A stretch of DNA of 63,996 nucleotides, counting the filler, from Salisapilia sapeloensis CBS 127946 (Eukaryota; Protista; Oomycota): the NCBI GenBank assembly GCA_023334545.1. It is 6 parts of 6 records of this genome, joined end to end, with 100 filler letters (N's around TTAATTAATTAA, not from the genome) between each part and the next. Parts side by side here need not be neighbours in the genome. Positions count along the whole stretch, not along the records: positions 22,562 to 52,481 come from JAADVB010000225.1; 5 more parts are not named here. One strand, written 5' to 3'. The position numbers and the translations under genes are program-made. Shown piece by piece: positions 23,079 to 49,788 of this stretch (within the stretch, counting starts at the first letter, position 1; each line of letters begins with the position of its first letter). Below the pieces are notes generated by a model, which made no database searches, was not told where the DNA came from, and saw only the letters and a list, made by a program, of their open reading frames with translations.

Positions 23079-23972
23079 TGGATTTGCCTATTGGAGTTCA
23101 TTTTCGAGAGAAAATGTTGAGAGACGAACGTAGCGTATACGTAATATGTTGAGTTTATAGTCAATGGCTTCTATTTCTTTTAATTTGGTTGGATCGAACC
23201 AATGTGTAAGTAGTAGTAATAGTTTGTGGTACATGGCGTTATACCCGCTGGTATCGAAGTAGCAATGATTAATTTGCACCACTTGGAAGGAGATATACCT
23301 TACGACGATACAAGCAATGATAGGAAAATCATGATAAAACTCTCTTAGGGGGTAAGCATTCTTCCAGTAGGACCGTCCAGAGTTCTCGAAACCGGTGAAG
23401 GTGTGGGTAACTAGGCGGCAGATCATAATGCTGGAATGGGAGATGCAAGAGAGATATCTGGTGATACTGAAACATCTGCATGTCCAATATCCGTACTGCT
23501 TGTTCTGGCAACCAGAAGTCTTGATCCATATTGAATGAGAGTCGGCAGTGCCCAATGATCTCAACAAATAATATACTAGCAGGCATGCCGTGTCATGTGG
23601 TAATCTCGGATGTTTGTGCGAAGCTACTGCATCTGATGTCATAGATATCAACTTGAACGATCAAATGCTATTCATCACTCTATGTAGTTGAACCAACCAA
23701 TCTGCTCCTTCCATGTGACGCAATAAAGGATCGGCATCAATGAAAGCGATCACCAACTGAAATTAATAGATTGTCATTTTCTATCGACGAACATGTTTGT
23801 AAGATAGTGCCACACCTATGATACTATTCAATTATTCTTTAACATTTACTAAGGATCACATACGCTTCCCAGGATGGATGTTGGTCTGGGAGCTTCAACT
23901 TGTACGAAGTTTATAAAGATAGAAACTCGAAACTACCGGAACTAAATGTAGCAGTTGAAACGCCCAAGTGCC

Positions 23973-26900
23973 ATGGCATGGAAGAGGACTCATTCACCAA
24001 GCGACGCAAAGAGGAAAAAGGCGAAGAAAGGAATTAAAGATATGTTTGACTGGGTAAGGGAGAGAAGCAGTCAAATTCGTAAGTCAAAGTCACCACAATT
24101 TACTCCCCATGAGCTCCAAAATGCGGTTTTTAATAAGCATCGTACAATGTTTGTAAACGAACTGGATCGTACATATGAGCATGCTGCTGCTGTAGGCACC
24201 TACTACAGTACGAACGACGTGTGCACTTCCAAGTACACTTGGCTTAGTTTTATGCCAAAGTCACTGCTCGAACAATTTCGCCGAGTTGCAAATTGCTACT
24301 TTCTCGTCATTTCCTTGCTCCAGCTCGGCACTAATCTTTCGCCAACGAATGAGTACTCTACAATTGGACCACTTCTACTTGTTTTATTTGCAACGATGAT
24401 AAAGGCTGGTCTGGAAGACCGCCGCCGCCATCATCTCGACTATGAATTGAACCATCGTTTTGCAGAAGTTCTTGTTTCTGCCGCTAACGATTCGACAGGC
24501 ACTTTTCGAAAGAAAAACAAGGTCGTGAATTCGCCTGAGGACTGTCGTGACGGCTCTCTCGGGGATATATTTGAGTCGGTACATTGGAAAAGTTTACGTG
24601 TTGGTCAGGTTGTGCGAGTCCAGAAGGATGAAGCAGTTCCAGCGGACCTCTTATTACTCTTCTCAAGTGACAGCAACAATGAAGCTGTGTGTGAGACATC
24701 CTCATTAGATGGCGAGTCCGACATGAAAATTCGCCATTGCCTAGCTTGGGATAATATCAAACCGGCTAAAGCTTGTGACTTTGGTGACTCAGTTCGAGCA
24801 AGGATCCGTTGTGAAGAGCCCCACCAGAGCATTTCTACTTTTGAAGGATTAATCACAATATCCAGGCTAAAATCTAAATCTTCTTCAGGTCAGGGGAAGG
24901 TTCCAACTTACAAGCCAATATGGTCGCAAGATCGATCTATGGGGGCTGCTGATGATAGCGACGACTTGAGTATCAGTATAGAAAACTTACTTTTACGTGG
25001 TACGAAGCTGAAGAACACCAAGTGGGTGATTGGTACCGTTGTTGCGGCTGGGAAAGATACCAAACTTATGCAGAATATGAAAGGAGCGCCATCAAAGTTT
25101 AGCCGAATGGATCGCATGGCAAATCGATGCGTGTTAGCTGTATTCGCAACCTTGTTTGTAATTTGCTCTTCTCATGCTGCAAATCACTTGGTCGGTGCTG
25201 CTGCTGTCTACAAAAGGCAAGATACAGCTGATGCAATGTTGCACGTAGACCCTCCATCCTTTGCAAGTTACTGCAAATCCTGGATCACCTTTCTTATTCT
25301 TTACAACAACATGGTACCAATTTCGCTGTACATCAGTTTGGAAGTTATCAAGTGGTATCAAGCTCGTCGTATAGAAGAAGATACAGAATTGCACTGTCGC
25401 GAAACAGGTAACCATGCAACAGTCCGCACCACAGATATTAATGAGAACCTTGGTGAGATCAAGTACATTTTCAGTGATAAAACAGGCACTATAACAAAGA
25501 ATCAAATGCTCTTCCGTCATTGTAGCATAGGCGGAATCGTTTTTGATGGGAAGACGATGGAGCTACGACAAAATTTTCGCGAAAGAAAAGGAGATAAAGA
25601 AGGAACAACGGATTTGCAACAGACAGGTTCTGAAAGTCCATTTTTCTCCAACACTGCAATGCAGCAGTCGAAACCATATAGTAATCGAAATGGTCGTCAG
25701 GTATCCTTAGACATACGATCGCATGACCAGCTATTTAATTTTGTTCATCCGACCCATGACTTGAGTTTGCGAGAGCAGGCAGTTGGAAAACTTGCTATTC
25801 CATTCTTTAGATGTATACTTCTTTGCCACACTGTGTCCATCGCAGAGTCGGACGGCACAGATGAGCACGCGTGTACGTATTACGGAACGTCGCCAGACGA
25901 AGTAGCATTGCTTAACGCAGCTGCAGAGTTTTCATGTTATTATGATGGGAAAGATGGAAGTGTGGTATCACTTCGAGTGTTTGGAAAGCGTGAGAAGTAC
26001 CAAATTCTCGATACGAATGAATTTGATAGCACTCGAAAATGCATGTCAGTTGTTGCACAACGCGTATTCGACGATGAGAATGTCGAGGTCATGGACTATG
26101 AGAGAGATATCTTCGTATTCATGAAGGGTGCTGATAACGTTATGTTTCACAAAGCACTGAGAACATCAGAGCTCAAGCAGTTAGGGCAGCACATTCAGTA
26201 TTTTGCTGAAATGGCATTGCGGACATTACTTTTCGGATTTAAAATAATATCTCAAGATGAATACGAAACATGGAAAGAGGAGTCAGATAGCAGCAAGAAG
26301 AGCATGGAAAATAGGGAGCACAAAATTCAAACGAGTTTAAAAAGTCTTGAGTCATCTATGTACCTCGTAGGAGCAAGTGGAGTGGAAGATCTCTTGCAAG
26401 AGAATGCAAAAGCGAGCATTCAAACTCTTCGAGAAGCTGATATCAATGTTTGGATGCTAACGGGAGACAAAGAGGCAACTGCGGTTTCCATTGGTCATAT
26501 GTGTGGCTTAATCGAGAAACAAACGCGTTTGATTGTCATAAAGGGAAAAAATCGAAATGAATGTCTGGAGGAAATTGCTTTCGCTCGCAAGAGGATGAAA
26601 AGAAACGGCTTATGGACACCAGGCATTGCGAAGAAGAACTATGCTCTAGTGGTCAATAGCTCAGCTCTGGAATTTCTTCTGTCGGATCCTGGAGCAGCTA
26701 CTCGACAGACAGTAATTGCGAGGCCATTGACTGCGGATGGATTAAACGAGACAAGTGTAGGTGGTCTATCTGAAAATGGAGGAGATAGTCATACGACGCC
26801 ACCCAAGAGCAGGTTTGAAACAAATTTAGACAAAGCAGAACGGCATCAGATTGCGAACGACAACCGTGGAAGCACGCGCAGATCGATAACAAGTACATCA

Positions 26901-29900
26901 TCCATAGTTTCCAGCTCGGAACCAGCAAGTACAGAAGAGATTTTCATACAATTGGCGACTCAGTGTTCTACCGTCATCGCTTGTAGATTGAGTCCGATCC
27001 AAAAAGCTCAAGTGGTAAGTCTCATAAGAGAGTCCATCGGCAATCCGTTGACCTTGGCAATTGGTGATGGAGGTAATGATGTTAGCATGATCCAAGAGGC
27101 GGACGTTGGTGTAGGTGTCTATGGTCATGAAGGTATGCAAGCCGTACGCGCTGCAGACTTTACGCTTGCTAATTTTAGTCATCTACCACGCCTACTACTT
27201 GTTCATGGCAGATGGAATGCTCGACGCCTAGGACTGGTCATCTTGTTCACATTTTACAAAAACTTTGCTCTCATCTCGACGCTGATGTGGAACTCTGTGC
27301 GAAATACGTTTTCAGGTCAAACACTTTACGAGTCATATCTGATGGCTGGATGGAATGTCTTTTATACTTTCTTTCCAATTTTCGTACTAGGTATCTATGA
27401 CAAAGACTTGTCTGCTGGCATCGTACTTGCATGCCCGTTCGCCTATAAAACTTCTATGAAAGAGAACCAGCTTACCATATCTCGTTTAACGAAGTGGACG
27501 TCCGCAGCGGCGCTTCATGCGTCAATTGTGATTGGGATGTTTTTTATGGCAGAAAACCGCTCTATGTCAGATGCTGACGGGAAGACCGATGGTATCTACA
27601 CACTTGGGACTGCGATTTATAGTTGCCTCATCTACGTGGTCACTGCTAAAGCTGCTTTAATAATGGAGCCAATATATAGGTGGCGAAGTGTGCAGTATTT
27701 ATCTCTAGCCGGCGGCATTATTGCATTCTTTGTCTACACTGGCATATACTGCAACCTCTACGTCCTCTTTCCATACTTCGATGTCTTTCGAGATATGTAT
27801 GGAATATTTTCTCGTCTCGTCTTAAACTCGACGTACTGGCTTATTTGCCTTTTAACGACTGTGCTGTCAATTCTACCTGACGTCGTTGTCGTGTACTTCC
27901 AAAAGACGTATTTGCCAAGCAGCAATGACATCCTTCGCGAGATCGATGTCGGTTTTGATGAAGAATACATTGAAGAGCGAGACTACGCCTTAAATGCATC
28001 GATTTCAGCGGATCGCAGCATGGATTTACTTGGTCCAACGCGTTCACAGAGAAGTGGGAGTTTTTCTGCAAGACGTAGAACACTTCGAGATTCATCAGGC
28101 TCCTTTCATCCTAATCGTGCAAATGAAAATTGGGGAGTGGACTTGTCCGATTCTCACAATGAACCATCAGAATGCATGGAGCTCACGAGGCTGCTAACAG
28201 ATTGTCAAAGAGCGATTGCCCAAGAACTTGGTATGCCAGATCCATTGCTTCGAGATGAAGAAATAAACAACACTTCCTCATTCAAGCGTCAGCCAAAAAC
28301 TCATCCGATAACACTACAGTTCATGGGAGAAGAGCATCAATACCTGGAGCAAGAGTATCAGTACGTGTTTGCGTGTCGTGAACGCCCACGTGTCTTACTC
28401 TGCCTTCACTTGTTATTAGTCTTCATTCCTTTCTACGCAGTTTATGAAGTCTTCATAGAGAAGCAGATGGACTATTTAAATGTACGCATAAGTATGTTCC
28501 TCTTGGCTGTCTTATGCATACGCCTGGTTCGAACAACGGCATTTATTAAGCACTATCACAAGATAGTAACAACATGCACGGCTATTGCTGGCTTCACTTT
28601 AACAGTGACCATTTCGGACACTGGGAAATTTGCTACTGCACTATTTCCCGTTGTGGCATTCGTAATCATACGAGTCCACTTTCACTACGCGCTTCTTCTG
28701 GCTGCAGGTCATGCTGCCTTCTACTTTTCTCTAACATCCTTTGCAATGGCATTTAAACCTGGATCCCCAGCAGCCAACGAACAACTGTTCTTTTGTCTCT
28801 ACATGATATTCACGATTATCTTTTCTGCCACGGCGAGCTACTCGCTTCAGCTCACTATGCGAAAAGAGTTTTTACAAAGTCGATCTCTAGGATTAGAGCA
28901 AAAGCGATCGACTGAGATATTGAACAATATGATGCCAGCACACGTTGTGCAAAGACTTCACAATGGTGAAACTTCTATTAGTGATGAAGAACCGGACGTC
29001 ACGATTTTATTTTGTGATATTGCCAATTTTAATGCCGCACTTAATAAGTTTGATGCGAATGAAGTTGTTTCAATTCTCGATAGGCTGTATTCTTTATTCG
29101 ACCAACTCTGCATCAAGCATGGAGTTCAAAAGATGGAAACAGTAGGGAAGACATACATGGCATGTGCTGGTCTTCAAGGAAAAATGAAAGGCAAGATGGC
29201 TGCTGTTCGGGTTGCTGCCATGGCAACAGATATGCTCGATATAATCTCATCGATTGGCACATCCGAAGGGTATAGTATTCAAATACGCATCGGAATCAAT
29301 TCTGGACCTGTATTGAGTGGACTAGTTGGCACCAAGAAGCAGCAATTTTCTTTATTCGGAGACACTGTGAACACGGCATCAAGAATGCAATCTACAGGGA
29401 TTATCGGTCGGTGCCAGTTATCTCGTGAAACCTATTTAAAGTTGTCCAGGCATTTCATTTTTGATGAACGTAAGGTGGAGGCGAAAGGCAAAGGTTGGCT
29501 TACAACCTATATCCTCGATGAGCCAAAAAGTATTTTAGCTCACATGGCTTGTGCAGGAAGACTCGATGCTGTCAACAGACGAACTTCAACACAATCAACA
29601 CCTTCTTTTAAACCTTCCTCACCAGTGCATGGAAATCTTAATGAAGATAGTCTGAGGATGCTTACAGCGGCTGGACAGTCAAAGTTGAAAGTCTGGAGTG
29701 ATTTCTTAAATATGAGAAGCGTATCGAGATGGGTATTAGGCGTAGGAGATGCGGAATCTACAGCGGAAGCGGATGAAAATCGAACAAACGTGGAAATAAT
29801 GGCACAAATCAGAAGGCTGATACTAACTTTCAAAGACGATGATGTAGAAGATGAATACCGGCTGAAAACCAGTTCAGCTCGGGTGGCTGGTTCCCGTAAG

Positions 29901-31562
29901 ACGATTCTAGCAATCATCTACTACTTTACATTTGCAATTATCCGAGATATTACATTATCTGATACGATTTTTAGCAGCAATACGAAAACTTATGGACATG
30001 TCTACGAAGATACTCTATTGCTTGTTGGTTCGCGAGGCGGCTTCATTGTGTTTGCTGCAGTTATATTGCTTACATTTCGAAAGGGAATAAGTGAAGCGTT
30101 TATAAAGTATGCTCCTTATATGACGACACTGAATTACTTCTGTTGTTTACTTGCGGCAAACAATCCTCTATATGTGTTTTGGCGGAGAGCGTACGAAGCT
30201 GATCTCAATCCAGGCCCATTCTATGTTCTAGCCTGTTTGGACTTTATTGCCATTATGCTCGTCATGTCGAACGGAGGATCTTTGCAGCACCGGTTCGTGA
30301 TCATGTGCAATACAGTACTACTGGTGACCACAACAGCGATAAATATACACATGATGATATCAAGTCCACTGCAACCGGAAAAGTTTAACTCCAACTTTCA
30401 GCCGTCCTACCCGTTAATATTGCTGTTCATGGCAGCAATCATTAATTTCATTGCAACTTCAAGTGTCGAATCTTTCCATCGTCGTCAATATCTACTCATC
30501 AAGCGAACAAAGCAGGAGACTGAAACTGCAGATCATTTAATATATCACATGCTTCCTGCAGCAGTTGTAGCCCGACTTAAGACTGGTGATGCCGTTTGTG
30601 AACATCACCGTCAGGTCGGCATATTGTTTTCGGACATCAAAGGTTTTACTTCCATGTCGTCTAAAGCAGATCCGACACAAGTGGTCTCCGTCCTTAGCTC
30701 TCTATTCAGTGCTTTTGATCGGCTAACCGAAACGCACGGCGTTTTCAAATTACAGACCATTGGAGATGCCTACGTGATTGTATCTGGATTGCCGTATGTT
30801 GACATCAGCGCTGCTGCCTCGAAGTCGTTAGCAGACATCTCGTTCTCAAATTATGCCCTTTCAAAGTCAACCGCTGTCCGGCAGCCAGTGCTCAATTATG
30901 GTGCTAACAAAGCTGGTGAAGATGTATTGAAAGAGATTGAGGCAGACGAAATACGGACTTCTTCTCCGACAGCAAAATTGGCAGAAAATGCCAGGAGAGT
31001 AACTTTGGTAAGAACGATGACTCAACGAAGCGACATACAATCGAAAGAATCATCAGCGAAGCAATCGTCTGCAGATAGCAGCTCAAAACCTATAGAATAC
31101 ACTCGGAACGGTAGAAAAGGAGCCGCAAATGTCTTAACTGGGCGATCTAGATTGGCGTCGCGCCGAACCACGATTAAAGATGCGTCGAGACTCCAGTTAC
31201 GAACACATATTCGTGATTTGTTATTGATGGCACGCGATATGCATCGTGAAGTTGCGGCCATTACAGATCCAAACACTGGAGAGCAGCTTCAGATGCGCAT
31301 TGGTATTCACATCGGAAATATTATTGGTGGCGTGATTGGCACTACGACACTAAGGTATGATATGTGGGGGCACGATGTCTTGACTGCGAATGAGATGGAA
31401 TCCAATGGTGTACCTGGAAAGACGCTTGTGAGCCCCCAAGTGGCATTGGCTGTGAGTGGCATGAAAGATATCCAGTGCGAGTTCCATCGAGAAGTGGAAT
31501 TTACGAATGCTGGCAAGATGAACACCTACCTAGTTGAGTGTAGCCCGGACCAGGAAGACTAG
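23973..31562 (+). CDS. Bifunctional P4-type ATPase (flippase-like)/guanylyl cyclase
   Basis: One uninterrupted ORF of about 2530 aa (first ATG 23973). P4 motifs TSKYT, LDGESD, VPISLY, SDKTGT, SPDEVALL, WMLTGDK, ACRLSPIQK, GDGGNDVSMIQ; then two TM clusters and two class III cyclase domains (ILFCDI..KMETVGKTY..FSLFGDTVNTASRM; ILFSDIKGF..QTIGDAY..YDMWGHDV). Confidence 0.95.
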   Translation: MAWKRTHSPSDAKRKKAKKGIKDMFDWVRERSSQIRKSKSPQFTPHELQNAVFNKHRTMFVNELDRTYEHAAAVGTYYSTNDVCTSKYTWLSFMPKSLLEQFRRVANCYFLVISLLQLGTNLSPTNEYSTIGPLLLVLFATMIKAGLEDRRRHHLDYELNHRFAEVLVSAANDSTGTFRKKNKVVNSPEDCRDGSLGDIFESVHWKSLRVGQVVRVQKDEAVPADLLLLFSSDSNNEAVCETSSLDGESDMKIRHCLAWDNIKPAKACDFGDSVRARIRCEEPHQSISTFEGLITISRLKSKSSSGQGKVPTYKPIWSQDRSMGAADDSDDLSISIENLLLRGTKLKNTKWVIGTVVAAGKDTKLMQNMKGAPSKFSRMDRMANRCVLAVFATLFVICSSHAANHLVGAAAVYKRQDTADAMLHVDPPSFASYCKSWITFLILYNNMVPISLYISLEVIKWYQARRIEEDTELHCRETGNHATVRTTDINENLGEIKYIFSDKTGTITKNQMLFRHCSIGGIVFDGKTMELRQNFRERKGDKEGTTDLQQTGSESPFFSNTAMQQSKPYSNRNGRQVSLDIRSHDQLFNFVHPTHDLSLREQAVGKLAIPFFRCILLCHTVSIAESDGTDEHACTYYGTSPDEVALLNAAAEFSCYYDGKDGSVVSLRVFGKREKYQILDTNEFDSTRKCMSVVAQRVFDDENVEVMDYERDIFVFMKGADNVMFHKALRTSELKQLGQHIQYFAEMALRTLLFGFKIISQDEYETWKEESDSSKKSMENREHKIQTSLKSLESSMYLVGASGVEDLLQENAKASIQTLREADINVWMLTGDKEATAVSIGHMCGLIEKQTRLIVIKGKNRNECLEEIAFARKRMKRNGLWTPGIAKKNYALVVNSSALEFLLSDPGAATRQTVIARPLTADGLNETSVGGLSENGGDSHTTPPKSRFETNLDKAERHQIANDNRGSTRRSITSTSSIVSSSEPASTEEIFIQLATQCSTVIACRLSPIQKAQVVSLIRESIGNPLTLAIGDGGNDVSMIQEADVGVGVYGHEGMQAVRAADFTLANFSHLPRLLLVHGRWNARRLGLVILFTFYKNFALISTLMWNSVRNTFSGQTLYESYLMAGWNVFYTFFPIFVLGIYDKDLSAGIVLACPFAYKTSMKENQLTISRLTKWTSAAALHASIVIGMFFMAENRSMSDADGKTDGIYTLGTAIYSCLIYVVTAKAALIMEPIYRWRSVQYLSLAGGIIAFFVYTGIYCNLYVLFPYFDVFRDMYGIFSRLVLNSTYWLICLLTTVLSILPDVVVVYFQKTYLPSSNDILREIDVGFDEEYIEERDYALNASISADRSMDLLGPTRSQRSGSFSARRRTLRDSSGSFHPNRANENWGVDLSDSHNEPSECMELTRLLTDCQRAIAQELGMPDPLLRDEEINNTSSFKRQPKTHPITLQFMGEEHQYLEQEYQYVFACRERPRVLLCLHLLLVFIPFYAVYEVFIEKQMDYLNVRISMFLLAVLCIRLVRTTAFIKHYHKIVTTCTAIAGFTLTVTISDTGKFATALFPVVAFVIIRVHFHYALLLAAGHAAFYFSLTSFAMAFKPGSPAANEQLFFCLYMIFTIIFSATASYSLQLTMRKEFLQSRSLGLEQKRSTEILNNMMPAHVVQRLHNGETSISDEEPDVTILFCDIANFNAALNKFDANEVVSILDRLYSLFDQLCIKHGVQKMETVGKTYMACAGLQGKMKGKMAAVRVAAMATDMLDIISSIGTSEGYSIQIRIGINSGPVLSGLVGTKKQQFSLFGDTVNTASRMQSTGIIGRCQLSRETYLKLSRHFIFDERKVEAKGKGWLTTYILDEPKSILAHMACAGRLDAVNRRTSTQSTPSFKPSSPVHGNLNEDSLRMLTAAGQSKLKVWSDFLNMRSVSRWVLGVGDAESTAEADENRTNVEIMAQIRRLILTFKDDDVEDEYRLKTSSARVAGSRKTILAIIYYFTFAIIRDITLSDTIFSSNTKTYGHVYEDTLLLVGSRGGFIVFAAVILLTFRKGISEAFIKYAPYMTTLNYFCCLLAANNPLYVFWRRAYEADLNPGPFYVLACLDFIAIMLVMSNGGSLQHRFVIMCNTVLLVTTTAINIHMMISSPLQPEKFNSNFQPSYPLILLFMAAIINFIATSSVESFHRRQYLLIKRTKQETETADHLIYHMLPAAVVARLKTGDAVCEHHRQVGILFSDIKGFTSMSSKADPTQVVSVLSSLFSAFDRLTETHGVFKLQTIGDAYVIVSGLPYVDISAAASKSLADISFSNYALSKSTAVRQPVLNYGANKAGEDVLKEIEADEIRTSSPTAKLAENARRVTLVRTMTQRSDIQSKESSAKQSSADSSSKPIEYTRNGRKGAANVLTGRSRLASRRTTIKDASRLQLRTHIRDLLLMARDMHREVAAITDPNTGEQLQMRIGIHIGNIIGGVIGTTTLRYDMWGHDVLTANEMESNGVPGKTLVSPQVALAVSGMKDIQCEFHREVEFTNAGKMNTYLVECSPDQED

Positions 31563-38306: not shown

Positions 38307-39302
38307 TTACAACAGAATGTACTTGAGACTCAATCGTTTGCTCTCTCCACGCTTTGCAGATACAACGTCATGTGGACCTGGACCGAGTTCACAAAGAGGT
38401 GAGATAAGTGCTTTCGACAATATTTCATTCGCACTTTGAGCACTTTGTAACAATTGTGCAAAAGCCGAGAAGAAATCGACATGTAAATCCAATCGCGTTA
38501 ATCGTCCAGTCGGACCAAAGTGAAGACTGAAGCGGAAGGATGGATGGATTTCCTGTCCGACGATACGTAGACTTAATTCATCATCATTGACAATGTGCGG
38601 ATACAAGAGCATGACCGTGTCTCGAGAGATTCGGAGAAGAAAGACTCCGGTCAAGTCGAACGAACTCGTCATATCTTGTTCTCGCTCACTCAAATCGACC
38701 ACATTCTCTACTTGTACAGACGCAATGTCGATATGACAAATCGCATGATACGACGTATATCTTTTCATTTGTGTACAAAGTGCCTCGACACCGTTCGTCG
38801 AAGCGCTTTGGCAAGCAAAGTCTGTCGTAGTGGCAAAGTGGAGAAAGCGCTCTTGAAGATCGCGTAGCCACGTCGAGTGGAGGGCAAATCCGTCCTGAAA
38901 TAAACGAAGGAATTGACGCGTGATGAGCCACGGGCGAGCATTCGCTTCGTCCAATGTCCTTGCACGCGACTGATCAAACGTAGATAGGAATGTTCGGTAG
39001 ACAAACAGCTCCGTCAGCTCTTCTCCCAATGTCTGTGTTTCATCTGATAGAGACTCAATGATGCCTTGCTGTCGAGCGCGGTAGCGACGTTGATTGAGTT
39101 TGCACTGCATTTTGCGTCTCGCTTTTCGTTCGTCCTCATTCTGGACAATCGGTCGTCGACCTCGCTTGCGAGGTGCTTTGCCATTCGATTTAGTTGACCC
39201 GTCTGCGACCTGTCGAGTGTCCTCGAGGGGAGGTCCGTCTGACGGTTGCGATGTGGACGTGGGCGTTGTGATCAAAGCGCTCGGACTTGCCCTTGTATCC
39301 AT
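38307..39302 (-). CDS. Oomycete-type bZIP transcription factor (Cys at the invariant-Asn position)
   Basis: RRKMQCKLNQRRYRARQQ basic region, zipper, then the typical oomycete bZIP C-terminal domain (WLITRQFLRLFQDG..). Confidence 0.85.
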   Translation of the reverse strand: MDTRASPSALITTPTSTSQPSDGPPLEDTRQVADGSTKSNGKAPRKRGRRPIVQNEDERKARRKMQCKLNQRRYRARQQGIIESLSDETQTLGEELTELFVYRTFLSTFDQSRARTLDEANARPWLITRQFLRLFQDGFALHSTWLRDLQERFLHFATTTDFACQSASTNGVEALCTQMKRYTSYHAICHIDIASVQVENVVDLSEREQDMTSSFDLTGVFLLRISRDTVMLLYPHIVNDDELSLRIVGQEIHPSFRFSLHFGPTGRLTRLDLHVDFFSAFAQLLQSAQSANEILSKALISPLCELGPGPHDVVSAKRGESKRLSLKYILL

Positions 39303-40558: not shown

Positions 40559-41806
40559 TCATCGCTCACATTTAGGTATACTCGAGGCGTCTTTGAATAA
40601 AACGATATCGTCATAATCCACGCTCTCGGATTTAATGCCTGACGTCGAATTGGAGTCCAATGCGAGACTTTCCAAAGTCAGATCTGCTGAAGTTCCAATC
40701 GATGCTTTCAACTCGCTACGGATGCACACATCTGCACTGACACGACGCGCAATAAGGACGCATCCCTTACAGAACGAAAAGTTTTTAGCCTTCAAGACAC
40801 CCCGATCGAGACGAAGTATGATACGACGGCGCACTTTACAACGACTGCAAAGAGGCTGGCGACAAACGGTGCAAGTGCCATGGTTGATCAAAGATTTGCC
40901 GGCTCCACAGCGACCAGCACAATCCGACGTCGATGGTTCGTTACGCATATATGTATCCTTATACGATGTCTGCATCATCCAGTGAAGCTTCCTCGATAAA
41001 CCGGCTTCGCCGACTAGCGAAGATGTCGCAAGAAACATGCTTACAGCTTTGGTTGATGCTATTTCCGGAATCGATCCCATCGTAGCCATAAATCCAGAAT
41101 GATAGAGCTCGACAAAGTTAGCATCCAACTGACGTCTGAGATAGCAGACCGATCCTTGGGCGCGCACACAACCATTATTCAACTCGGTCTCGCGAATATC
41201 AATAGAATGTGCGATAAAGTAACCGATTTGTTGACCATCTTTTCCCTCCGTCATGCCCATTTTGAAAAGGACTAGTACATCCCTCACATCGACGAAAGGG
41301 ATGACCGAGTTGCCCATCGTTAACCATGCGATAGCACAACTCTGATACGGCTTCTCAACGGTCGGTGTTTCGAGCGTGCATAAGTATCTGGTGTTTACCA
41401 AATTGTCTTCGACGAACATGGATCGAGCATTCCATTCAGAGGCTGTGGCTGATAGGTCTCCGTATTGGAAGTCAGATACTGTTCCAGGCACTTTGCCGAC
41501 GAGAAGAAATTTAGGAACTGATTGTTTTGGGTCAGTGACCTTATATCCACCCCGTGGTGTCTTGAGCATACGCGGGGTCTCACGAATGCGTTTCCGATCT
41601 TGGAATATTTCCAAGTGATCAACTCGTTGATGAAGCTTCCAGTATTCAGGATCCACTTGCCGATCGCGTTTATCTCGGAAATCTTTAAAATCTGCGATTG
41701 CTTTTTGTAGAATCTCGTCAGCCATTTCCTTTAATACAACCTCGGACTCTGGTCGCAATGCGAAATTCTTGGGGGCATTCGCCAATATCTTTTCCATAGA
41801 TGGCAT
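40559..41806 (-). CDS. START-like domain + degenerate FYVE-type zinc finger protein (oomycete-expanded type)
   Basis: WKLHQRVDHLEIF, LLVGKVPGTVSD..G, VRDVLVL, YFIAHSIDI, VRAQGSVCYL, then CAGRC..CTVC..CSRC..CKGC. Confidence 0.75.
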   Translation of the reverse strand: MPSMEKILANAPKNFALRPESEVVLKEMADEILQKAIADFKDFRDKRDRQVDPEYWKLHQRVDHLEIFQDRKRIRETPRMLKTPRGGYKVTDPKQSVPKFLLVGKVPGTVSDFQYGDLSATASEWNARSMFVEDNLVNTRYLCTLETPTVEKPYQSCAIAWLTMGNSVIPFVDVRDVLVLFKMGMTEGKDGQQIGYFIAHSIDIRETELNNGCVRAQGSVCYLRRQLDANFVELYHSGFMATMGSIPEIASTKAVSMFLATSSLVGEAGLSRKLHWMMQTSYKDTYMRNEPSTSDCAGRCGAGKSLINHGTCTVCRQPLCSRCKVRRRIILRLDRGVLKAKNFSFCKGCVLIARRVSADVCIRSELKASIGTSADLTLESLALDSNSTSGIKSESVDYDDIVLFKDASSIPKCER

Positions 41807-44800: not shown

Positions 44801-45546
44801 CTAGTATGCGCAGTCAGTGGTGTCACAATTCGATGAATGTAACATCGAAGCCACTGCGTTGAACATCGTTATGGGAGCCAACCTTGCCGGCTATGACTTC
44901 TGCAGCCTCGTACGCTTTTGCTTCCACGTTAGAGCCGTGCTTGCCCTTGCGCAACCATAGACGGTTCAGATATTGACATCCCGCAGATGTCACTGTTTCA
45001 TCGTTGTGCTGGATGTTTGACCGTGACTCGGCGGTCCCTCAAATAGGCACGATTGGCCAAACCAATCTTTCAAGATAACCAAATCATCTGCGCGACCAAG
45101 CTCAACGTACAGATTGCTGGCTTCGTCGACAACGGCTTTTTTTAATTTTTCTCGGAAGCTTATTCGAGTCCAGCACACCGGTTTTCGGTAAAGCCGCCCA
45201 GTACTCTATGGCGCATTCTGTGGTCCATTGGTTTGATTGGTAACCTAGAATAGTCTCAGTAGTAAACAACACTTACTTGTAGTATTTAATCTGTACCGAG
45301 ACATTTCGTCTGAAGCAAGATGTTTGTTATCTGAATCACGTTCGTATACAAGATCCCGATCTCACCTATCCACGTTTTGCAGCTCCAGTGCAAATCGGAT
45401 GGTCTTCGAATACATGTTTAGACCTTTTTTGCTTCAAACAGCAGATAGCATCAGGAAGTACCTGCGACTCGCTGATAGAATTGGCATTCTCGTTTTTTCG
45501 AGCTTTCTCTCAAGCGGACTTTCATCTTATCGAAACGGACGCTGAC

Positions 45547-48500
45547 ATGAAAGCCATCTTTCAGGCCCTCGTGGTTTCGGCGGCAGCAACGCTGATACCT
45601 TCCATCTATGCTGCCGCTCCAGATCAAGCAGACTTTCCTGCTTGTCCTTCTCACTGGATGACCAAGTACTGTTGTGACCTGGGTATCTATCAAGAGGGCG
45701 ATACCAACGAAGAGTACGGCACGATCAAGTATGTCTTCAAGGAGTATCAGCGGCCTCGTGGAAAAGGAAATAGCGGAGGTGATATCACGGAAACCTACGA
45801 AGAAGGCTGGCTAAAGGAACGCCAGATCAACTACCCGTACTCTCAGTACACGGTCGGCACTCAAAAGTTCCATTGGCGTGCTGATGACTACTGTACACTG
45901 TCCAAGGTTGGCACCGAAATGGACGGCAATGAATTCGTCTACGAATACAACTGTACGAACGACCCAGCTGAAGCCAAGGCGCTTGGATTCGTGGAAGACA
46001 AGTATGTCACGTTTGAGGAGAACCCTCGAAACAACATGGCTCGTTGTAATGGCACCTACGTCAAGATCAACACGACTGACGATGAACTCGCGTGCAGCTT
46101 CATTAGTGTACCGATCGACTACTACTTTACGACCGGAGGTGAACCACCAGCTATCGTCATCTACGTTATCTACGGAGCTCTATTTGCATGCATCGGTCTC
46201 TGGTATGCGTACAAGAAGATGTACGAAGCTGCCGTCCTACACCAGACCAAGAACAAGTCGGCGACAGCAGACAAGGGTGCCAGTTTGATGGAGGACCGTG
46301 GTGGCCCCGTCACGCCCGTTCCGGGTGAGGACACTGCCGGTCGCAAGTCACACGTCAGCATGCGATCCACGGAGATTAAGCTACGTGAGCAGACGAAGGA
46401 AATCAAGCAGGTTGGTTACAAGGACTCTATCTTTGGCAACGCGCTGCTTGCTTGGTTCGGCTTTATGGCTCTCTGCGTCCACGTCCTTCTCATCATGGTT
46501 ATCATGGACTACTACGGACACTTCCCGCGACCTTTGCTCAAGTCTGGCCAACCTCTTCTGTCGGTCTACATCTTCTTCTGGTGTACCATGCTCATCTGGA
46601 GTATGGTCATCGTGCTAACCCAGAAGACCATCCGCAACTTCTTCCGGCTTCGTGCACCGCTCGAAAAGTCGGACTTTGTCTACTTGTTCAAGCCCGAGTA
46701 CAGCGAAATTATGCTCAAGGACCGCACCAAGATTGTCGACTTTGTCCAAAAGATCGAGAAGACACTGATGCCGGATTACCAGCCAGGTCATGAAGCCACT
46801 GTCCCGGTCCAGATTACGGAGAACGGTTCTCGCTACATTGAGTTCCAGAACATCCGCTACAGCTTCTTGGAAGAGTGGGATCAATTTGTTCCGTCCACCA
46901 TCGAACTTGGTGAAACGTTTAAAGACATTCTGCTCGAGAGCGAAGGACTTAGCGAACAGGCATACAACGCCCGACTCAACCACGTCGGTCCGAATGCTAT
47001 TGACATCGAAATGCCGACGCTGCTTATGTCCATCCGGATGGAATTCTTCACGTTCTTCTACATCTACCAAATGGTCTGCTACTACGTCTGGTACTACTTT
47101 GACTACTGGAAGCTTGCTATCGTCATGACCTGTGTCATCGCCTTATCGGCTGTCATCAACATCTATACGACGCGTAAGATGCGTGCTTCGATTGTCAAAA
47201 TGTCCAAGTACGAGACCCAAGTCCGTGTCAAGCGCTCTGACCAATGGAAGACTGTCAGCTCCCGTGATCTTGTTCCTGGTGACCTTGTGTCCGTCGAAGA
47301 GAACTGGACGCTACCGTGCGACATGGTCATCGTCGCTGGTGCCACTGTCTGTGACGAAAGTATGCTCACGGGTGAAGCAAACCCGGTGCAAAAGTTCCCG
47401 ATTCCGGAGTCGGACCACGAGTACGATGCCGCGGGCGGCGGAAAGAAGTACACGCTCTTCTCTGGTACCAAGGTTCTATCTTCTGGACGTGATGAAGAGA
47501 TTTATGCTGTGGTGCAAACTACTGGTGCCCACACGTCCAAGGGTCTGCTCATCCAGAACATTCTCTTCCCAGTCCTCATGCGATTTAAGTACGACGAGCA
47601 CCTCAAGGTCATTATCGGCTTGCTCCTCATCTACGCCGTTATTGCTGTCATCCTTGCTGTCAAATTCCTCACGAGCAATGCTTCGCTTTCCAACCCTCTG
47701 AACGCTTTCTGCTACGCCATCTTCTTGCTCTCTGGTATTGTATCTCCTCTTCTCCCGTGTGTTGTCACGATCGGTCAAGTGAATGCTGCCAAGCGTCTAG
47801 AAGAGCTTAGCGTCTTCTCTCTCAACACCAACCGTATCACCCTCACGGGTAAGATCCGTGTCTTCTGCTTCGACAAGACCGGTACGCTAACCAAGGAAGG
47901 TCTTGACTTTCTTGGATTCAAACCCATCGACACGTCGAACCAAACGTTCTTGGACATGGTGCCTGGCATCGACCTGAACAACATGGGCAAGCTCTCCACG
48001 TTTGCGCTCGCTTCGTGCCACTCTGTTGGTTCCCTCAACGGTGATCTCGTCGGTAATCAGGTTGAAGTGAAGATGTTCCGTGCTACTGGATGGGAGCTCA
48101 TTGAAGAGCAAGGCAAGCAACCGATCGTCAAGAGTCCGTCTGGCACGCAGCTTCAGGTTGTCAAGCGCTTCGAGTTTGACCACCACCGTATGTCCATGTC
48201 TGTCGTAATGCGTGACGTGGAGAGTGGCAAGCTGTACGTCTTCTGCAAGGGTTCGTACGAAAAGATGCAGCAAGTCGCCACCGACGAAAGTCTTCCTGGT
48301 GACTACATGAAGGTGTCGGAAGAGCTTGCGCGTGATGGTTGCTATGTCCTCGGTATGACCGTGCGTGAGCTGCCTGCCATGGAAGAGTCGGAGCTCCAGA
48401 GCTTTATCAAGGACCGTGACGCCGTTGAAACTGGCCTCCACTCCCTTGGTCTCGTGCTCTTCCGTAACGAGCTGAAGGAAGACACTACTGATGCTATCCG

Positions 48501-49788
48501 CCAACTGCAGGAAGGACAAATCCGTCCGGCCATGATCACTGGTGACAATGCCATGTGCGGTTGCTACATTGCTAAGCAGTGTGGCATGGTCAAGGGTAAC
48601 TCTCAGGTCATCCTCGCTGACATGCAGGGTGAACGTGGCACTGGTAAGCAGCTTGTCTGGAGTGACGTCAAGACCCGCGAGACTTACTCCACCGAACAGG
48701 TGCGTGGTATGGCTGGTGGCGATGATATTGAACTTGCAGTTACTGGACCTGCCTTTGACCACCTTTGCAAGATCGACTTGATGAACGAGCTGCTTCTCCA
48801 CACGCGTATCTACTCACGTATGACTCCGGACGGGAAGGTCCAGTGCGTCCAGATGCACATGGACAAGGGTCTCGTGACTGGTATGTGCGGTGACGGTGGT
48901 AATGACTGCGGTGCCCTACGTATTGCTCACGCCGGTATCGCTCTGTCTGACGCTGAAGCATCGATCGTGTCTCCGTTCACGTCCAAGACGAAGACGGTCA
49001 TGTCGGTTGTGGACTTGTGCCGTGAAGGCCGTTGCTCGCTTGCAACGAGCTTCGGTAGTGTCAAGTTCCTCATCATGTACGGCCTCATCTGTTCGACGCT
49101 GCGTCTGGTGCAGTACTACTACGCTATTATGATCAGTGAGTGGTGCTTCGTCGTGTCTGACGCCTTCTGTCTCGTCGGTTTCTCCTACTTCATTACATTG
49201 TCCAAGCCGAAGCCGTACTTGGGTAGCGAACGACCGACGTCGAGTTTGGTTGGCCCAACGACAATTGCATCCATCCTCGGACAAGAAGCCATCAACGTCA
49301 TCTTCCTACTGACTGGTCTCCACTACCTCAGTCAAGCGGACTGGTACTGCCCGTTCGACCCCGCTGGTGCGGATCTTTCCAAGTGGTGGTTGCTTGCAGA
49401 CAACTCCATTACGACGTGCCTCTTCTTTTCAGGTGTCGTCCAGCAACAAGCCTCAGCCTTCGTATATTCGTTCGGCTCGAGCTTCCGTCAGCCCATTTGG
49501 CGCAACTGGCAGTTCTGCCTGTTCTTCGCGGCGTTGGTCGCGTTCACCTTGTACTTGCTCTTGGGTGAGCCCTCCGTCGTTATGGACCAGTTGCGCATTG
49601 CAAGCAGTACGAACGTGGTTGGTCTACCGGACATTCCGATGCCGATCAGCTTCCGCACAGAGTACATGGGCTTCTTGTTGGGCAACATGGTCGCCACGAT
49701 GCTCTTTGAATATATATTCATCCTGGGCCCAGTGCGTAACTTCCTCCGATCCAAGTTCCACAAGGACCTCTTCGACTTGAAGATGTAA
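45547..49788 (+). CDS. P5-type ATPase with N-terminal signal peptide and Cys-containing ectodomain
   Basis: Likely ATG 45547 (MKAIFQALVVSAAATLIPSIYA). Motifs DLVPGD, DESMLTGEA, VSPLLP, CFDKTGTLT, FEFDHHRMSMSV, KGSYE, MITGDN, MCGDGGNDCGAL, SPFTS, EGRCSL. Confidence 0.93.
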   Translation: MKAIFQALVVSAAATLIPSIYAAAPDQADFPACPSHWMTKYCCDLGIYQEGDTNEEYGTIKYVFKEYQRPRGKGNSGGDITETYEEGWLKERQINYPYSQYTVGTQKFHWRADDYCTLSKVGTEMDGNEFVYEYNCTNDPAEAKALGFVEDKYVTFEENPRNNMARCNGTYVKINTTDDELACSFISVPIDYYFTTGGEPPAIVIYVIYGALFACIGLWYAYKKMYEAAVLHQTKNKSATADKGASLMEDRGGPVTPVPGEDTAGRKSHVSMRSTEIKLREQTKEIKQVGYKDSIFGNALLAWFGFMALCVHVLLIMVIMDYYGHFPRPLLKSGQPLLSVYIFFWCTMLIWSMVIVLTQKTIRNFFRLRAPLEKSDFVYLFKPEYSEIMLKDRTKIVDFVQKIEKTLMPDYQPGHEATVPVQITENGSRYIEFQNIRYSFLEEWDQFVPSTIELGETFKDILLESEGLSEQAYNARLNHVGPNAIDIEMPTLLMSIRMEFFTFFYIYQMVCYYVWYYFDYWKLAIVMTCVIALSAVINIYTTRKMRASIVKMSKYETQVRVKRSDQWKTVSSRDLVPGDLVSVEENWTLPCDMVIVAGATVCDESMLTGEANPVQKFPIPESDHEYDAAGGGKKYTLFSGTKVLSSGRDEEIYAVVQTTGAHTSKGLLIQNILFPVLMRFKYDEHLKVIIGLLLIYAVIAVILAVKFLTSNASLSNPLNAFCYAIFLLSGIVSPLLPCVVTIGQVNAAKRLEELSVFSLNTNRITLTGKIRVFCFDKTGTLTKEGLDFLGFKPIDTSNQTFLDMVPGIDLNNMGKLSTFALASCHSVGSLNGDLVGNQVEVKMFRATGWELIEEQGKQPIVKSPSGTQLQVVKRFEFDHHRMSMSVVMRDVESGKLYVFCKGSYEKMQQVATDESLPGDYMKVSEELARDGCYVLGMTVRELPAMEESELQSFIKDRDAVETGLHSLGLVLFRNELKEDTTDAIRQLQEGQIRPAMITGDNAMCGCYIAKQCGMVKGNSQVILADMQGERGTGKQLVWSDVKTRETYSTEQVRGMAGGDDIELAVTGPAFDHLCKIDLMNELLLHTRIYSRMTPDGKVQCVQMHMDKGLVTGMCGDGGNDCGALRIAHAGIALSDAEASIVSPFTSKTKTVMSVVDLCREGRCSLATSFGSVKFLIMYGLICSTLRLVQYYYAIMISEWCFVVSDAFCLVGFSYFITLSKPKPYLGSERPTSSLVGPTTIASILGQEAINVIFLLTGLHYLSQADWYCPFDPAGADLSKWWLLADNSITTCLFFSGVVQQQASAFVYSFGSSFRQPIWRNWQFCLFFAALVAFTLYLLLGEPSVVMDQLRIASSTNVVGLPDIPMPISFRTEYMGFLLGNMVATMLFEYIFILGPVRNFLRSKFHKDLFDLKM

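What the first reader, a model, noticed from the sequence alone, without database searches (positions are those of the whole stretch)
23973..31562. Flippase-guanylyl cyclase chimera with apparently intact pump motifs
Seen: an intronless 7.6-kb ORF. The ATPase keeps PISL, the phosphorylatable DKTGT and GDGGND, with DGES for DGET. The cyclase halves are in inverted order: the first has the catalytic N/R (VNTASRM) and the GTP-selecting E (KMET) and S (FSLFG), but Lys in place of the second metal Asp; the second has both Asps (SDI, GDAY). Known: the same layout occurs in ciliate and apicomplexan GCs, where it acts with CDC50; oomycete homologues have been noted but, to my knowledge, are little studied. 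Inference: a lipid-asymmetry sensor producing cGMP, plausibly in zoospores.
Basis: partly seen in the sequence, partly recalled or inferred. Interest (0 to 1): 0.75.

Follow-up and report, generated by a model that had tools for sequence, protein, structure and literature searches.

The report
Oomycete flippase–guanylyl cyclase fusion gene
This is an intact gene for a giant membrane protein that joins a lipid-flippase-type ATPase to a cGMP-making cyclase; the fusion family (P4GC) is already described in alveolates and oomycetes, so this is a new, well-preserved member from an unsampled oomycete, not a new kind of protein.

Summary
Window 23973-31562 (+) is one uninterrupted 2529-codon reading frame. 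It encodes a P4-ATPase module followed by a membrane cyclase module of two 6-helix bundles and two catalytic domains.

- **Pump motifs.** DGES, PISL, DKTGT, KGAD, TGDK, GDGGND and the TM5 Lys are all present.
- **Cyclase order.** The first catalytic domain is C2-like (E1722, S1793, N1800, R1804, K1840, with Lys1726 at the second metal position). The second is C1-like (D2221, D2265, R2442, R2461). This gives one GTP-type active site.
- **Family.** This is the known P4GC family: Paramecium, Plasmodium and Toxoplasma, plus 35 genes in 30 oomycete species surveyed in silico in 2026 (PMC13466520). DGES and GDGGND are shared by nearly all the oomycete P4GCs compared, so they are not peculiar to this gene.
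- **What is new.**
  - The nearest relatives are only 44-47% identical, and the host is an unsampled oomycete lineage.
  - The genome carries a second intact copy, 47% identical, from a lineage-specific duplication.
  - An insert in the second catalytic domain is enlarged in both copies.
- **Function.** The "lipid-asymmetry sensor in zoospores" idea remains inference. The only support is that the Phytophthora parasitica orthologue was detected in a zoospore membrane proteome.

Verdict: real, functional-looking, new member of a known kind; modest interest.

The parts
23973..31562 (+). Complete intronless coding sequence of the P4GC protein (2529 aa plus stop)
   Evidence: ORF list and translation. 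Homology to oomycete P4GCs runs from residue ~55 to the C-terminus. The first ~54 residues are poorly conserved, so the exact start codon is not verified.
24135..27932 (+). P4-ATPase (flippase-type) module, residues 55-1320, with 10 predicted membrane helices and the A, N and P domains
   Evidence: Pfam PF16209, PF13246, PF00702 and PF16212. PDB matches to ATP8A1 and Drs2 at E 1e-167 to 1e-164. Hydropathy peaks.
24708..24719 (+). DGES motif of the A domain (E248 is the dephosphorylation glutamate)
   Evidence: Aligned to DGET of fungal, animal and algal flippases. DGES occurs in 8 of the 9 oomycete P4GCs compared.
25317..25328 (+). PISL motif of TM4 (lipid groove)
25476..25490 (+). DKTGT phosphorylation motif (D502)
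27063..27080 (+). GDGGND hinge motif of the P domain
   Evidence: Gly replaces the usual Ala in every oomycete P4GC compared.
27933..28292 (+). Variable linker between the pump and cyclase modules (residues 1321-1440)
   Evidence: 26-27% identity to the paralogue and to P. infestans. The only conserved islands are EIDVGF just at its start and TLQFMGE just beyond its end.
28293..28847 (+). First cyclase membrane bundle (6 helices) plus helical stalk, residues 1441-1625
   Evidence: AlphaFold2 model: helices at model residues 14-214, which is protein residues 1453-1653, at pLDDT 85-93.
28848..29522 (+). Catalytic domain 1, C2-like. It supplies E1722, S1793, N1800, R1804 and K1840, and has Lys1726 at the second metal position.
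29523..29852 (+). c1b-type inter-domain linker; protein residues 1872-1929 are predicted disordered
   Evidence: pLDDT below 50 at model residues 433-490. 29% identity to relatives.
29853..30482 (+). Second cyclase membrane bundle (6 helices) plus helical stalk, residues 1961-2170
   Evidence: AlphaFold2 helices at model residues 528-754.
30483..30800 (+). Catalytic domain 2, N-terminal half, C1-like, with both metal aspartates (D2221, D2265)
30801..31202 (+). Ser/Ala/Arg-rich disordered insert that splits catalytic domain 2 (about residues 2277-2410)
   Evidence: pLDDT below 50 at model residues 841-965. The loop is 166 aa here and 169 aa in the paralogue, 76-121 aa in other oomycetes, and about 40 aa in the shortest relatives.
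31203..31559 (+). Catalytic domain 2, C-terminal half, with R2442 and R2461. L2470 and E2474 replace the transition-state Asn and Arg, so the second site is degenerate.

Best explanation
The ORF is an intact, expressed-type gene for a P4GC: a single 2529-aa membrane protein.

Shown here:
- The C-terminal half is a class IIIa-type cyclase. Two 6-helix bundles, two helical stalks and two catalytic domains fold into a pseudo-heterodimer.
- Only one of the two pseudo-symmetric sites is complete. Domain 2 (C1-like) gives the two metal-binding aspartates and the phosphate-binding Arg2442.
- Domain 1 (C2-like) gives the transition-state Asn1800 and Arg1804, Lys1840, and the base-selecting Glu1722 and Ser1793.
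- Arg2461 of domain 2 completes a guanine-type triad.
- The N-terminal half keeps every residue that a P4-ATPase needs for the phosphoenzyme cycle and for the lipid groove.

Inferred:
- The product should be cGMP. This rests on the specificity rules for class III cyclases and on assays of the Paramecium and Plasmodium homologues.
- The pump module can be phosphorylated at Asp502 and dephosphorylated through Glu248.
- It pairs with one of the two CDC50 subunits encoded in this genome.
- Its conformational cycle or its lipid occupancy is needed for cyclase activity and/or correct membrane placement, as genetics indicates in Plasmodium and Toxoplasma.
- The likely setting is signalling in spores or zoospores.
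For: - Architecture: Pfam and PDB sequence matches. The AlphaFold2 model of residues 1440-2529 has mean pLDDT 76 and pTM 0.67. It matches full-length adenylyl cyclases 5, 9 and 8 at E about 1e-32, with target-normalised TM about 0.6.
- Inverted order and residue assignment.
- Pump motifs match canonical flippases and are conserved in all oomycete relatives and in the second copy.
- Selection pattern: the catalytic domains are 65-75% identical to relatives, the flippase core is 49%, and the linkers are 26-29%.
- Placement inside the oomycete P4GC clade.
- The genome supplies the rest of a pathway: two CDC50 genes, many cNMP-binding domains and phosphodiesterases.
- Literature, enzyme activity: Paramecium and Plasmodium P4GCs make cGMP (PMC13466520; PMC5746546).
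- Literature, need for the pump module: mutants of the DKTGT aspartate are non-viable in Plasmodium (D to N) and Toxoplasma (D to E), and CDC50 is needed for localisation.
- Literature, zoospores: the P. parasitica orthologue PPTG_08439 was detected in zoospore membranes.
Against: - No enzyme activity, expression or localisation data exist for this gene or for this organism.
- No P4GC has ever been shown to hydrolyse ATP or to move lipid.
- The specificity prediction rests on an E/S pair. That pair is documented for ciliates only from my memory of Linder 1999. The papers read here name E/C and E/A.
- One study cited in PMC5322657 found no change in cAMP or cGMP during Phytophthora zoosporogenesis.
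- The start codon is unverified.
Confidence: 0.8

Rival explanations
1. The cyclase makes cGMP, but the flippase-like module does not pump. It serves only as a folding, trafficking or CDC50-docking scaffold, and cyclase output does not depend on ATP hydrolysis or lipid transport.
For: - Flippase or ATPase activity has never been demonstrated for any P4GC.
- Several lineages (Cryptosporidium, gregarines, Tetrahymena, Plasmodium GC-beta) have lost DKTGT or DGET and yet keep the module (PMC13466520).
- The flippase core is less conserved than the cyclase domains here as well, at 49% against 65-75%.
Against: - Every catalytic and groove motif is retained in both copies of this genome and across Saprolegniales, Pythium and Phytophthora. 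A pure scaffold would not be expected to keep them.
- Mutants of the phosphorylated Asp are non-viable in Plasmodium and Toxoplasma.
Confidence: 0.3
2. The enzyme is an adenylyl cyclase or a dual-specificity cyclase, not a guanylyl cyclase.
For: - The closest solved structures by sequence and by fold are mammalian adenylyl cyclases.
- Ser at the second specificity position is less common than Cys.
Against: - Glu1722 replaces the adenine-selecting Lys, and Ser1793 replaces the adenine-selecting Asp.
- Arg2461 sits where adenylyl cyclases have Gln.
- All three residues are invariant in oomycete P4GCs.
- The tested homologues are guanylyl cyclases with minimal adenylyl cyclase activity.
Confidence: 0.07
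3. The window copy is a redundant duplicate drifting towards a pseudogene, and the copy on contig C423 does the work.
For: - The window copy has the slightly longer branch, 0.72 against 0.55.
- It carries a few unusual substitutions in otherwise fixed positions, for example TGDKEAT where relatives have TGDKDET.
- The 2026 survey regarded most oomycete paralogues as defective.
Against: - There is no stop or frameshift in 7.6 kb.
- All catalytic residues of both modules are kept.
- Conservation is concentrated in the functional domains, which indicates purifying selection.
Confidence: 0.05

Closest known systems
Oomycete P4GC proteins (for example Phytophthora infestans XP_002904149, P. nicotianae/parasitica PPTG_08439, Globisporangium ultimum and Lagenidium giganteum homologues), catalogued in PMC13466520
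   Same: - Same domain order and a similar length (about 2600 aa).
- Same DGES, PISL, DKTGT and GDGGND motifs.
- Same E/S/R specificity triad and the same inverted cyclase halves.
- An insert at the same place in the second catalytic domain.
   Different: - Only 44-47% identical overall.
- It branches outside the Lagenidium/Pythium/Phytophthora clade.
- It is present as two diverged intact copies.
- The insert loop is 166-169 aa, against 76-121 aa in other oomycetes.
Alveolate P4GCs: Paramecium and Tetrahymena GC, Plasmodium GC-alpha and GC-beta, Toxoplasma ATPaseP-GC
   Same: - A P4-ATPase fused to a 2 x (6 TM + catalytic domain) cyclase.
- C2-like domain first and C1-like domain second.
- Glu at the purine-selecting position.
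- A single competent active site.
- CDC50 genes present in the genome.
   Different: - About 24-30% identity.
- Alveolates in my alignment have Ala, not Ser, at the second specificity position (the E/A pair is described for Toxoplasma).
- Several alveolate lineages have degenerate pump motifs, whereas this protein has none.
- The apicomplexan partner UGO was not searched for here.
Stand-alone P4A flippases (ATP8A1, Drs2, Dnf1) with CDC50
   Same: - E about 1e-165 over the whole pump module.
- All signature motifs and the TM5 Lys are present.
- The genome also encodes eight stand-alone P4-ATPases and two CDC50 proteins.
   Different: - It carries a 1200-aa cyclase module after TM10 in place of the short regulatory tail.
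- Lipid transport is untested.
Mammalian membrane adenylyl cyclases (AC5, AC8, AC9)
   Same: The overall fold of the cyclase module: 12 helices, a helical stalk and a catalytic pseudo-heterodimer with one active and one degenerate site.
   Different: - The order of the catalytic halves is swapped.
- The specificity residues are the guanine type.
- About 15% identity over the whole module.

Membership tests
P4GC (P4-ATPase/guanylyl cyclase chimera) | One polypeptide with an N-terminal P4-ATPase module and a C-terminal module of two class III cyclase domains | tested here: met
   Pfam and PDB sequence searches on the single uninterrupted ORF.
P4GC (P4-ATPase/guanylyl cyclase chimera) | Cyclase module with the 6 TM + catalytic, 6 TM + catalytic topology of class IIIa enzymes | tested here: met
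   The AlphaFold2 model has two 6-helix bundles with stalks. Foldseek matches full-length AC5, AC9 and AC8 at E about 1e-32.
P4GC (P4-ATPase/guanylyl cyclase chimera) | Inverted catalytic halves: the C2-like domain comes first and the C1-like domain second | tested here: met
   Domain-wise HMMER scores against AC5 and AC8. Residue distribution.
P4GC (P4-ATPase/guanylyl cyclase chimera) | Guanine-type specificity residues (Glu plus Cys, Ala or Ser) | tested here: met
   E1722 and S1793 align to the Lys and Asp of AC5 C2. Both are invariant in oomycete homologues.
P4GC (P4-ATPase/guanylyl cyclase chimera) | Phylogenetic placement inside the stramenopile/alveolate P4GC tree | tested here: met
   It falls within the oomycete clade, as sister to the Lagenidium/Pythium/Phytophthora group, with SH-aLRT 100.
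P4GC (P4-ATPase/guanylyl cyclase chimera) | Guanylyl cyclase activity | not testable with these tools
   This needs a biochemical assay. It has been shown only for the Paramecium and Plasmodium homologues.
P4GC (P4-ATPase/guanylyl cyclase chimera) | Works with a CDC50 subunit | tested here: inconclusive
   There are two CDC50 genes in the genome, on C811 and C989. With eight other flippases present, pairing with the P4GC cannot be inferred.
P4A-ATPase (lipid flippase) | Signature motifs DGET, PISL, DKTGT, KGAD, TGDK and GDGAND, plus the TM5 Lys and TM6 Asn | tested here: met
   All are present. There are two conservative changes, DGES and GDGGND, and the oomycete P4GCs compared share them (all have GDGGND; 8 of 9 have DGES).
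P4A-ATPase (lipid flippase) | ATP-driven phospholipid translocation | not testable with these tools
   This has never been shown for any P4GC.

The most novel reading that the evidence does not exclude
In this unsampled oomycete lineage the P4GC gene duplicated long ago. Both copies, now only 47% identical, have kept every catalytic residue of the pump and of the cyclase. They would then be functionally specialised enzymes, for example serving different life stages or membranes. This would be an independent parallel to Plasmodium GC-alpha and GC-beta. It would also contradict the published view that oomycete P4GC paralogues are decaying copies. Because the pump motifs are fully canonical, such proteins could be the first P4GCs in which real lipid flipping coupled to cGMP synthesis can be demonstrated.
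Probability: 0.35. Interest if true: 0.45.

Novelty: new member of a known kind. Interest (0 to 1): 0.3.

Why it matters
How the flippase half controls the cyclase half is an open question. In apicomplexan parasites P4GC is essential and initiates the cGMP signal behind egress, motility and invasion, and the proteins there are huge, divergent and hard to express. Oomycete versions, including this one, keep a textbook pump and a textbook cyclase in one intron-free gene. They are therefore reasonable material for asking whether the pump really cycles and flips lipid, and whether that gates cGMP synthesis. For oomycete biology the protein is the likely main source of cGMP in spore and zoospore signalling. 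None of this is new in kind: the family and its presence in oomycetes are already published.

Tried and rejected
- **Exact look-ups.** The P4GC and three neighbouring proteins are not in the 15-billion-protein collection, so the organism could not be named.
- **Albugo.** I first suspected it from the G+C content and the tree position. I rejected it because the neighbouring aminomethyltransferase is 73-75% identical to Pythium and Phytophthora but only 63% to Albugo.
- **Mixed assembly.** I considered two organisms as the source of the "paralogues". I rejected this because the aminomethyltransferase is single-copy in the genome.
- **Older duplication.** I tested a duplication that predates the split from Pythium and Phytophthora. 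Constrained trees are worse by 103-107 lnL, with AU p below 1e-38, under LG+F+G4. That model is site-homogeneous and both copies sit on long branches. The site-heterogeneous quick tree agrees, with SH-aLRT 100.
- **Unfinished tree.** The "careful" bootstrap tree did not finish in two 300-s runs. No ultrafast bootstrap values are given for that reason.
- **P. infestans transcript data.** I tried to link the P. infestans orthologue to the spore-induced cyclase genes PITG_09926, PITG_07126 and PITG_10287 of PMC5322657. Neither the supplements nor other papers gave the mapping, so that expression evidence is not used.
- **Flippase module structure.** It is longer than the 1200-aa limit, and I did not cut out internal loops, so no structure prediction was made for it.
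- **CDC50 on C811.** The two exons were not joined. The gene is described exon by exon only.
- **UGO.** The apicomplexan GC partner was not searched for, because no reference sequence was at hand.
Full report
**1. What is there**

The piece of genome given (window 22562-52481) holds one very long open frame on the + strand, from 23955 to 31562. The first ATG is at 23973, and it gives 2529 codons without a stop. G+C is about 43-47% and looks like the rest of the piece.

The neighbours on both strands are ordinary eukaryotic genes:
- a tRNA (uracil-5) methyltransferase-like gene
- an IQ-motif inositol-phosphatase-type gene
- the glycine-cleavage T protein
- two proteins with no Pfam match
- a P5-type ATPase

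Nothing in the neighbourhood bears on the finding.

**2. Architecture**

Pfam finds the N- and C-terminal P4-ATPase domains, the Cation_ATPase and HAD pieces between them, and then the class III cyclase domain in three stretches. Against the sequences of solved structures the two halves behave as follows:
- Residues about 55-1325 match ATP8A1, Drs2, Dnf1, ATP8B1 and ATP11C at E 1e-140 to 1e-167.
- Residues 1623-1849 match the second catalytic domain of adenylyl cyclases 5, 8 and 9.
- Residues 2181-2276 match receptor guanylyl cyclases and the first catalytic domain of adenylyl cyclase 5.

An AlphaFold2 model of residues 1440-2529, built on 28 homologues, has mean pLDDT 76 and pTM 0.67. It shows two bundles of six long helices. 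Each bundle is followed by a helical stalk and an alpha/beta catalytic domain. Foldseek matches the model over its whole length to the cryo-EM structures of adenylyl cyclases 5, 9 and 8, at E about 1e-32 and target-normalised TM about 0.6.

Two stretches are predicted disordered:
- protein residues 1872-1929, the linker between the two cyclase halves
- protein residues 2280-2404, a Ser/Ala/Arg-rich insert that splits the second catalytic domain

**3. Pump motifs**

I aligned the protein with fungal, animal and red-algal flippases returned by the protein search. It has:
- EQFRRVAN...LLQL in TM1
- LDGES (E248)
- PISLYISLE in TM4
- DKTGTIT (D502)
- the N-domain Phe and KGAD
- TGDK
- GDGGNDVSMIQ
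- FYKN (K1096, TM5)
- WNV (TM6)

The two departures from the textbook motifs are DGES for DGET and GDGGND for GDGAND. They are not peculiar to this gene. All nine oomycete P4GCs compared have GDGGND, and eight of the nine have DGES. The catalytic Glu, the phosphorylated Asp and the Mg-binding Asp residues are all in place.

**4. Cyclase residues**

HMMER alignments to adenylyl cyclases 5, 8 and 9 give the assignment.

| Feature | Domain 1 | Domain 2 |
|---|---|---|
| Score against C2 | 95.6 bits (AC5) | 13.8 and 30.7 bits for the two halves (AC8) |
| Score against C1 | 65.3 bits (AC5) | 43.5 and 41.6 bits for the two halves (AC8) |
| Metal positions | first Asp kept (D1682); Lys1726 at the second | both aspartates (D2221, D2265) |
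| Base selection | Glu1722 where C2 has the adenine-selecting Lys; Ser1793 where C2 has the adenine-selecting Asp | Arg2461 where adenylyl cyclases have Gln |
| Transition state | Asn1800 and Arg1804 | Leu2470 and Glu2474 instead of Asn and Arg |
| Phosphate binding | Lys1840 | Arg2442 of MRIGIH |

From my own knowledge of the soluble guanylyl cyclase specificity-swap work, the alpha subunit has Arg at the position of Arg2461.

The protein therefore has one complete active site with guanine-type determinants and one degenerate site. The halves are in the order opposite to mammalian adenylyl cyclases. That layout is described for the Toxoplasma and Plasmodium enzymes (PMC6592433; PMC5746546). 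All these residues are invariant in the oomycete homologues. The two other stramenopile sequences have Cys, and the alveolates have Ala, at the Ser position.

**5. What it is**

It is a member of the P4GC family. A 2026 survey found 177 P4GC genes in 132 species, including 35 genes in 30 oomycete species (PMC13466520). It reports:
- very high conservation of the flippase signature residues in oomycetes
- stronger conservation of the cyclase module than of the pump module
- no demonstrated ATPase or flippase activity for any member

My own per-region comparison gives the same picture for this gene. The catalytic domains are 65-75% identical to the paralogue and to P. infestans, the flippase core is 49%, and the linkers and inserts are 26-29%. 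That is the pattern of a gene under purifying selection.

**6. Whose gene it is**

The best matches are P4GCs of Phytophthora, Pythium, Globisporangium, Peronospora and Lagenidium at only 43-47% identity. Saprolegniales match at 36-40%. The exact protein, and three neighbouring proteins, are absent from the 15-billion-protein collection.

The neighbouring aminomethyltransferase gives this identity series:
- 73-75% to Pythium, Globisporangium and Phytophthora
- 68-70% to Saprolegniales
- 63% to Albugo

In trees of the P4GC protein the window's gene branches after the Saprolegniales. It is sister to the Lagenidium/Pythium/Phytophthora clade. The source is therefore an oomycete lineage that is not represented in the protein databases searched. 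I could not name it.

The assembly is small, 22.4 Mb in 1365 contigs. It contains a radial-spoke-3 gene, so the organism probably has a flagellate stage.

**7. A second copy**

Contig C423 of the same assembly carries another uninterrupted P4GC frame of 2609 aa (L014:777-8603, minus strand). It has the same Pfam architecture and is 47% identical to the window's protein. It keeps all the pump and cyclase residues listed above.

- The aminomethyltransferase is single-copy in the assembly, so a mixture of two organisms is unlikely.
- The two copies are each other's closest relatives, with SH-aLRT 100 under both LG+G4 and a site-heterogeneous model.
- Trees that place only one of them with the Pythium/Phytophthora clade are rejected, with delta lnL 103-107 and AU p below 1e-38 under LG+F+G4.
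- Both copies sit on long branches and the bootstrap search did not finish. The sister relation is therefore well supported but not beyond long-branch artefact.

The 2026 survey regarded most oomycete paralogues as defective. These two are not. Both also share an enlarged insert loop in the second catalytic domain: 166 and 169 aa, against 76-121 aa in other oomycetes.

**8. How it probably works**

Shown here:
- the fold
- the single guanine-type site
- the intact pump chemistry
- the presence in the genome of two CDC50 genes
- eight stand-alone P4-ATPases
- dozens of cyclic-nucleotide-binding domains
- at least five phosphodiesterase genes

One of the CDC50 genes has an in-frame TGA. The stop lies in a short GT...CTAAC...AG intron.

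Inferred from the family:
- The protein makes cGMP at a membrane.
- The pump module binds a CDC50 subunit.
- The pump module is needed for the activity or the placement of the cyclase.

In Plasmodium and Toxoplasma, mutation of the phosphorylated Asp is lethal, and CDC50 is needed for localisation (PMC13466520; abstracts). Whether the module senses or moves lipid is unknown for every member.

For the zoospore idea, the one relevant datum I could tie to an orthologue concerns PPTG_08439. It lies in the same 90% cluster as the Phytophthora nicotianae P4GC hit. It is listed among the cyclases detected by mass spectrometry in P. parasitica zoospore membrane fractions (PMC12223298).

P. infestans transcript data show cyclic-nucleotide genes induced in sporangia and zoospores (PMC5322657). 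I could not map its gene numbers to the orthologue.

**9. Verdict**

The object is real, intact and very probably functional. It belongs to a family whose presence in oomycetes is already published, so it is a new member of a known kind.

The modest additions are:
- the unsampled host lineage
- the pair of diverged intact copies
- the enlarged insert

The functional hypothesis remains open and can be tested with the assays listed under decisive next steps.

Noticed in passing
G000:C423, locus L014:777-8603 (minus strand): A second intact, intronless P4GC gene of 2609 aa, 47% identical to the window's copy. All pump and cyclase catalytic residues are retained. It is sister to the window's copy in the tree.
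   Followed up: yes
G000:C1200, locus L017:144-4247 (minus strand): A 1368-aa ORF that combines a class III cyclase domain with AAA_16, FYVE and PH domains. This is an unusual soluble cyclase/lipid-binding fusion.
   Followed up: partly
G000:C811, locus L015 about 1922-1975: The CDC50 gene has an in-frame TGA. The stop lies inside a roughly 54-nt intron with GT, a CTAAC branch site and AG. The genome therefore does use short introns, although the 7.6-kb P4GC gene has none.
   Followed up: partly
window 45388-49788 (+): A 1466-aa P-type ATPase ORF with a DKTGT-type motif and only E1-E2_ATPase, Hydrolase and Cation_ATPase Pfam hits. It is probably a P5 (ATP13A-like) pump. It lies 14 kb downstream of the P4GC gene. 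Long antisense ORFs inside it look spurious.
   Followed up: no
window 38307-39302 (-) and 40559-41806 (-): Two ORFs of 331 and 415 aa have no Pfam family. The first has a basic region that resembles a bZIP. The second is Cys-rich near its C-terminus.
   Followed up: no
G000:C549:11651-12615: A phosphodiesterase (PDEase_I) match is broken by several stop codons (TAA, TGA, 2 TAG). It may be a pseudogene or a gene with many introns.
   Followed up: no
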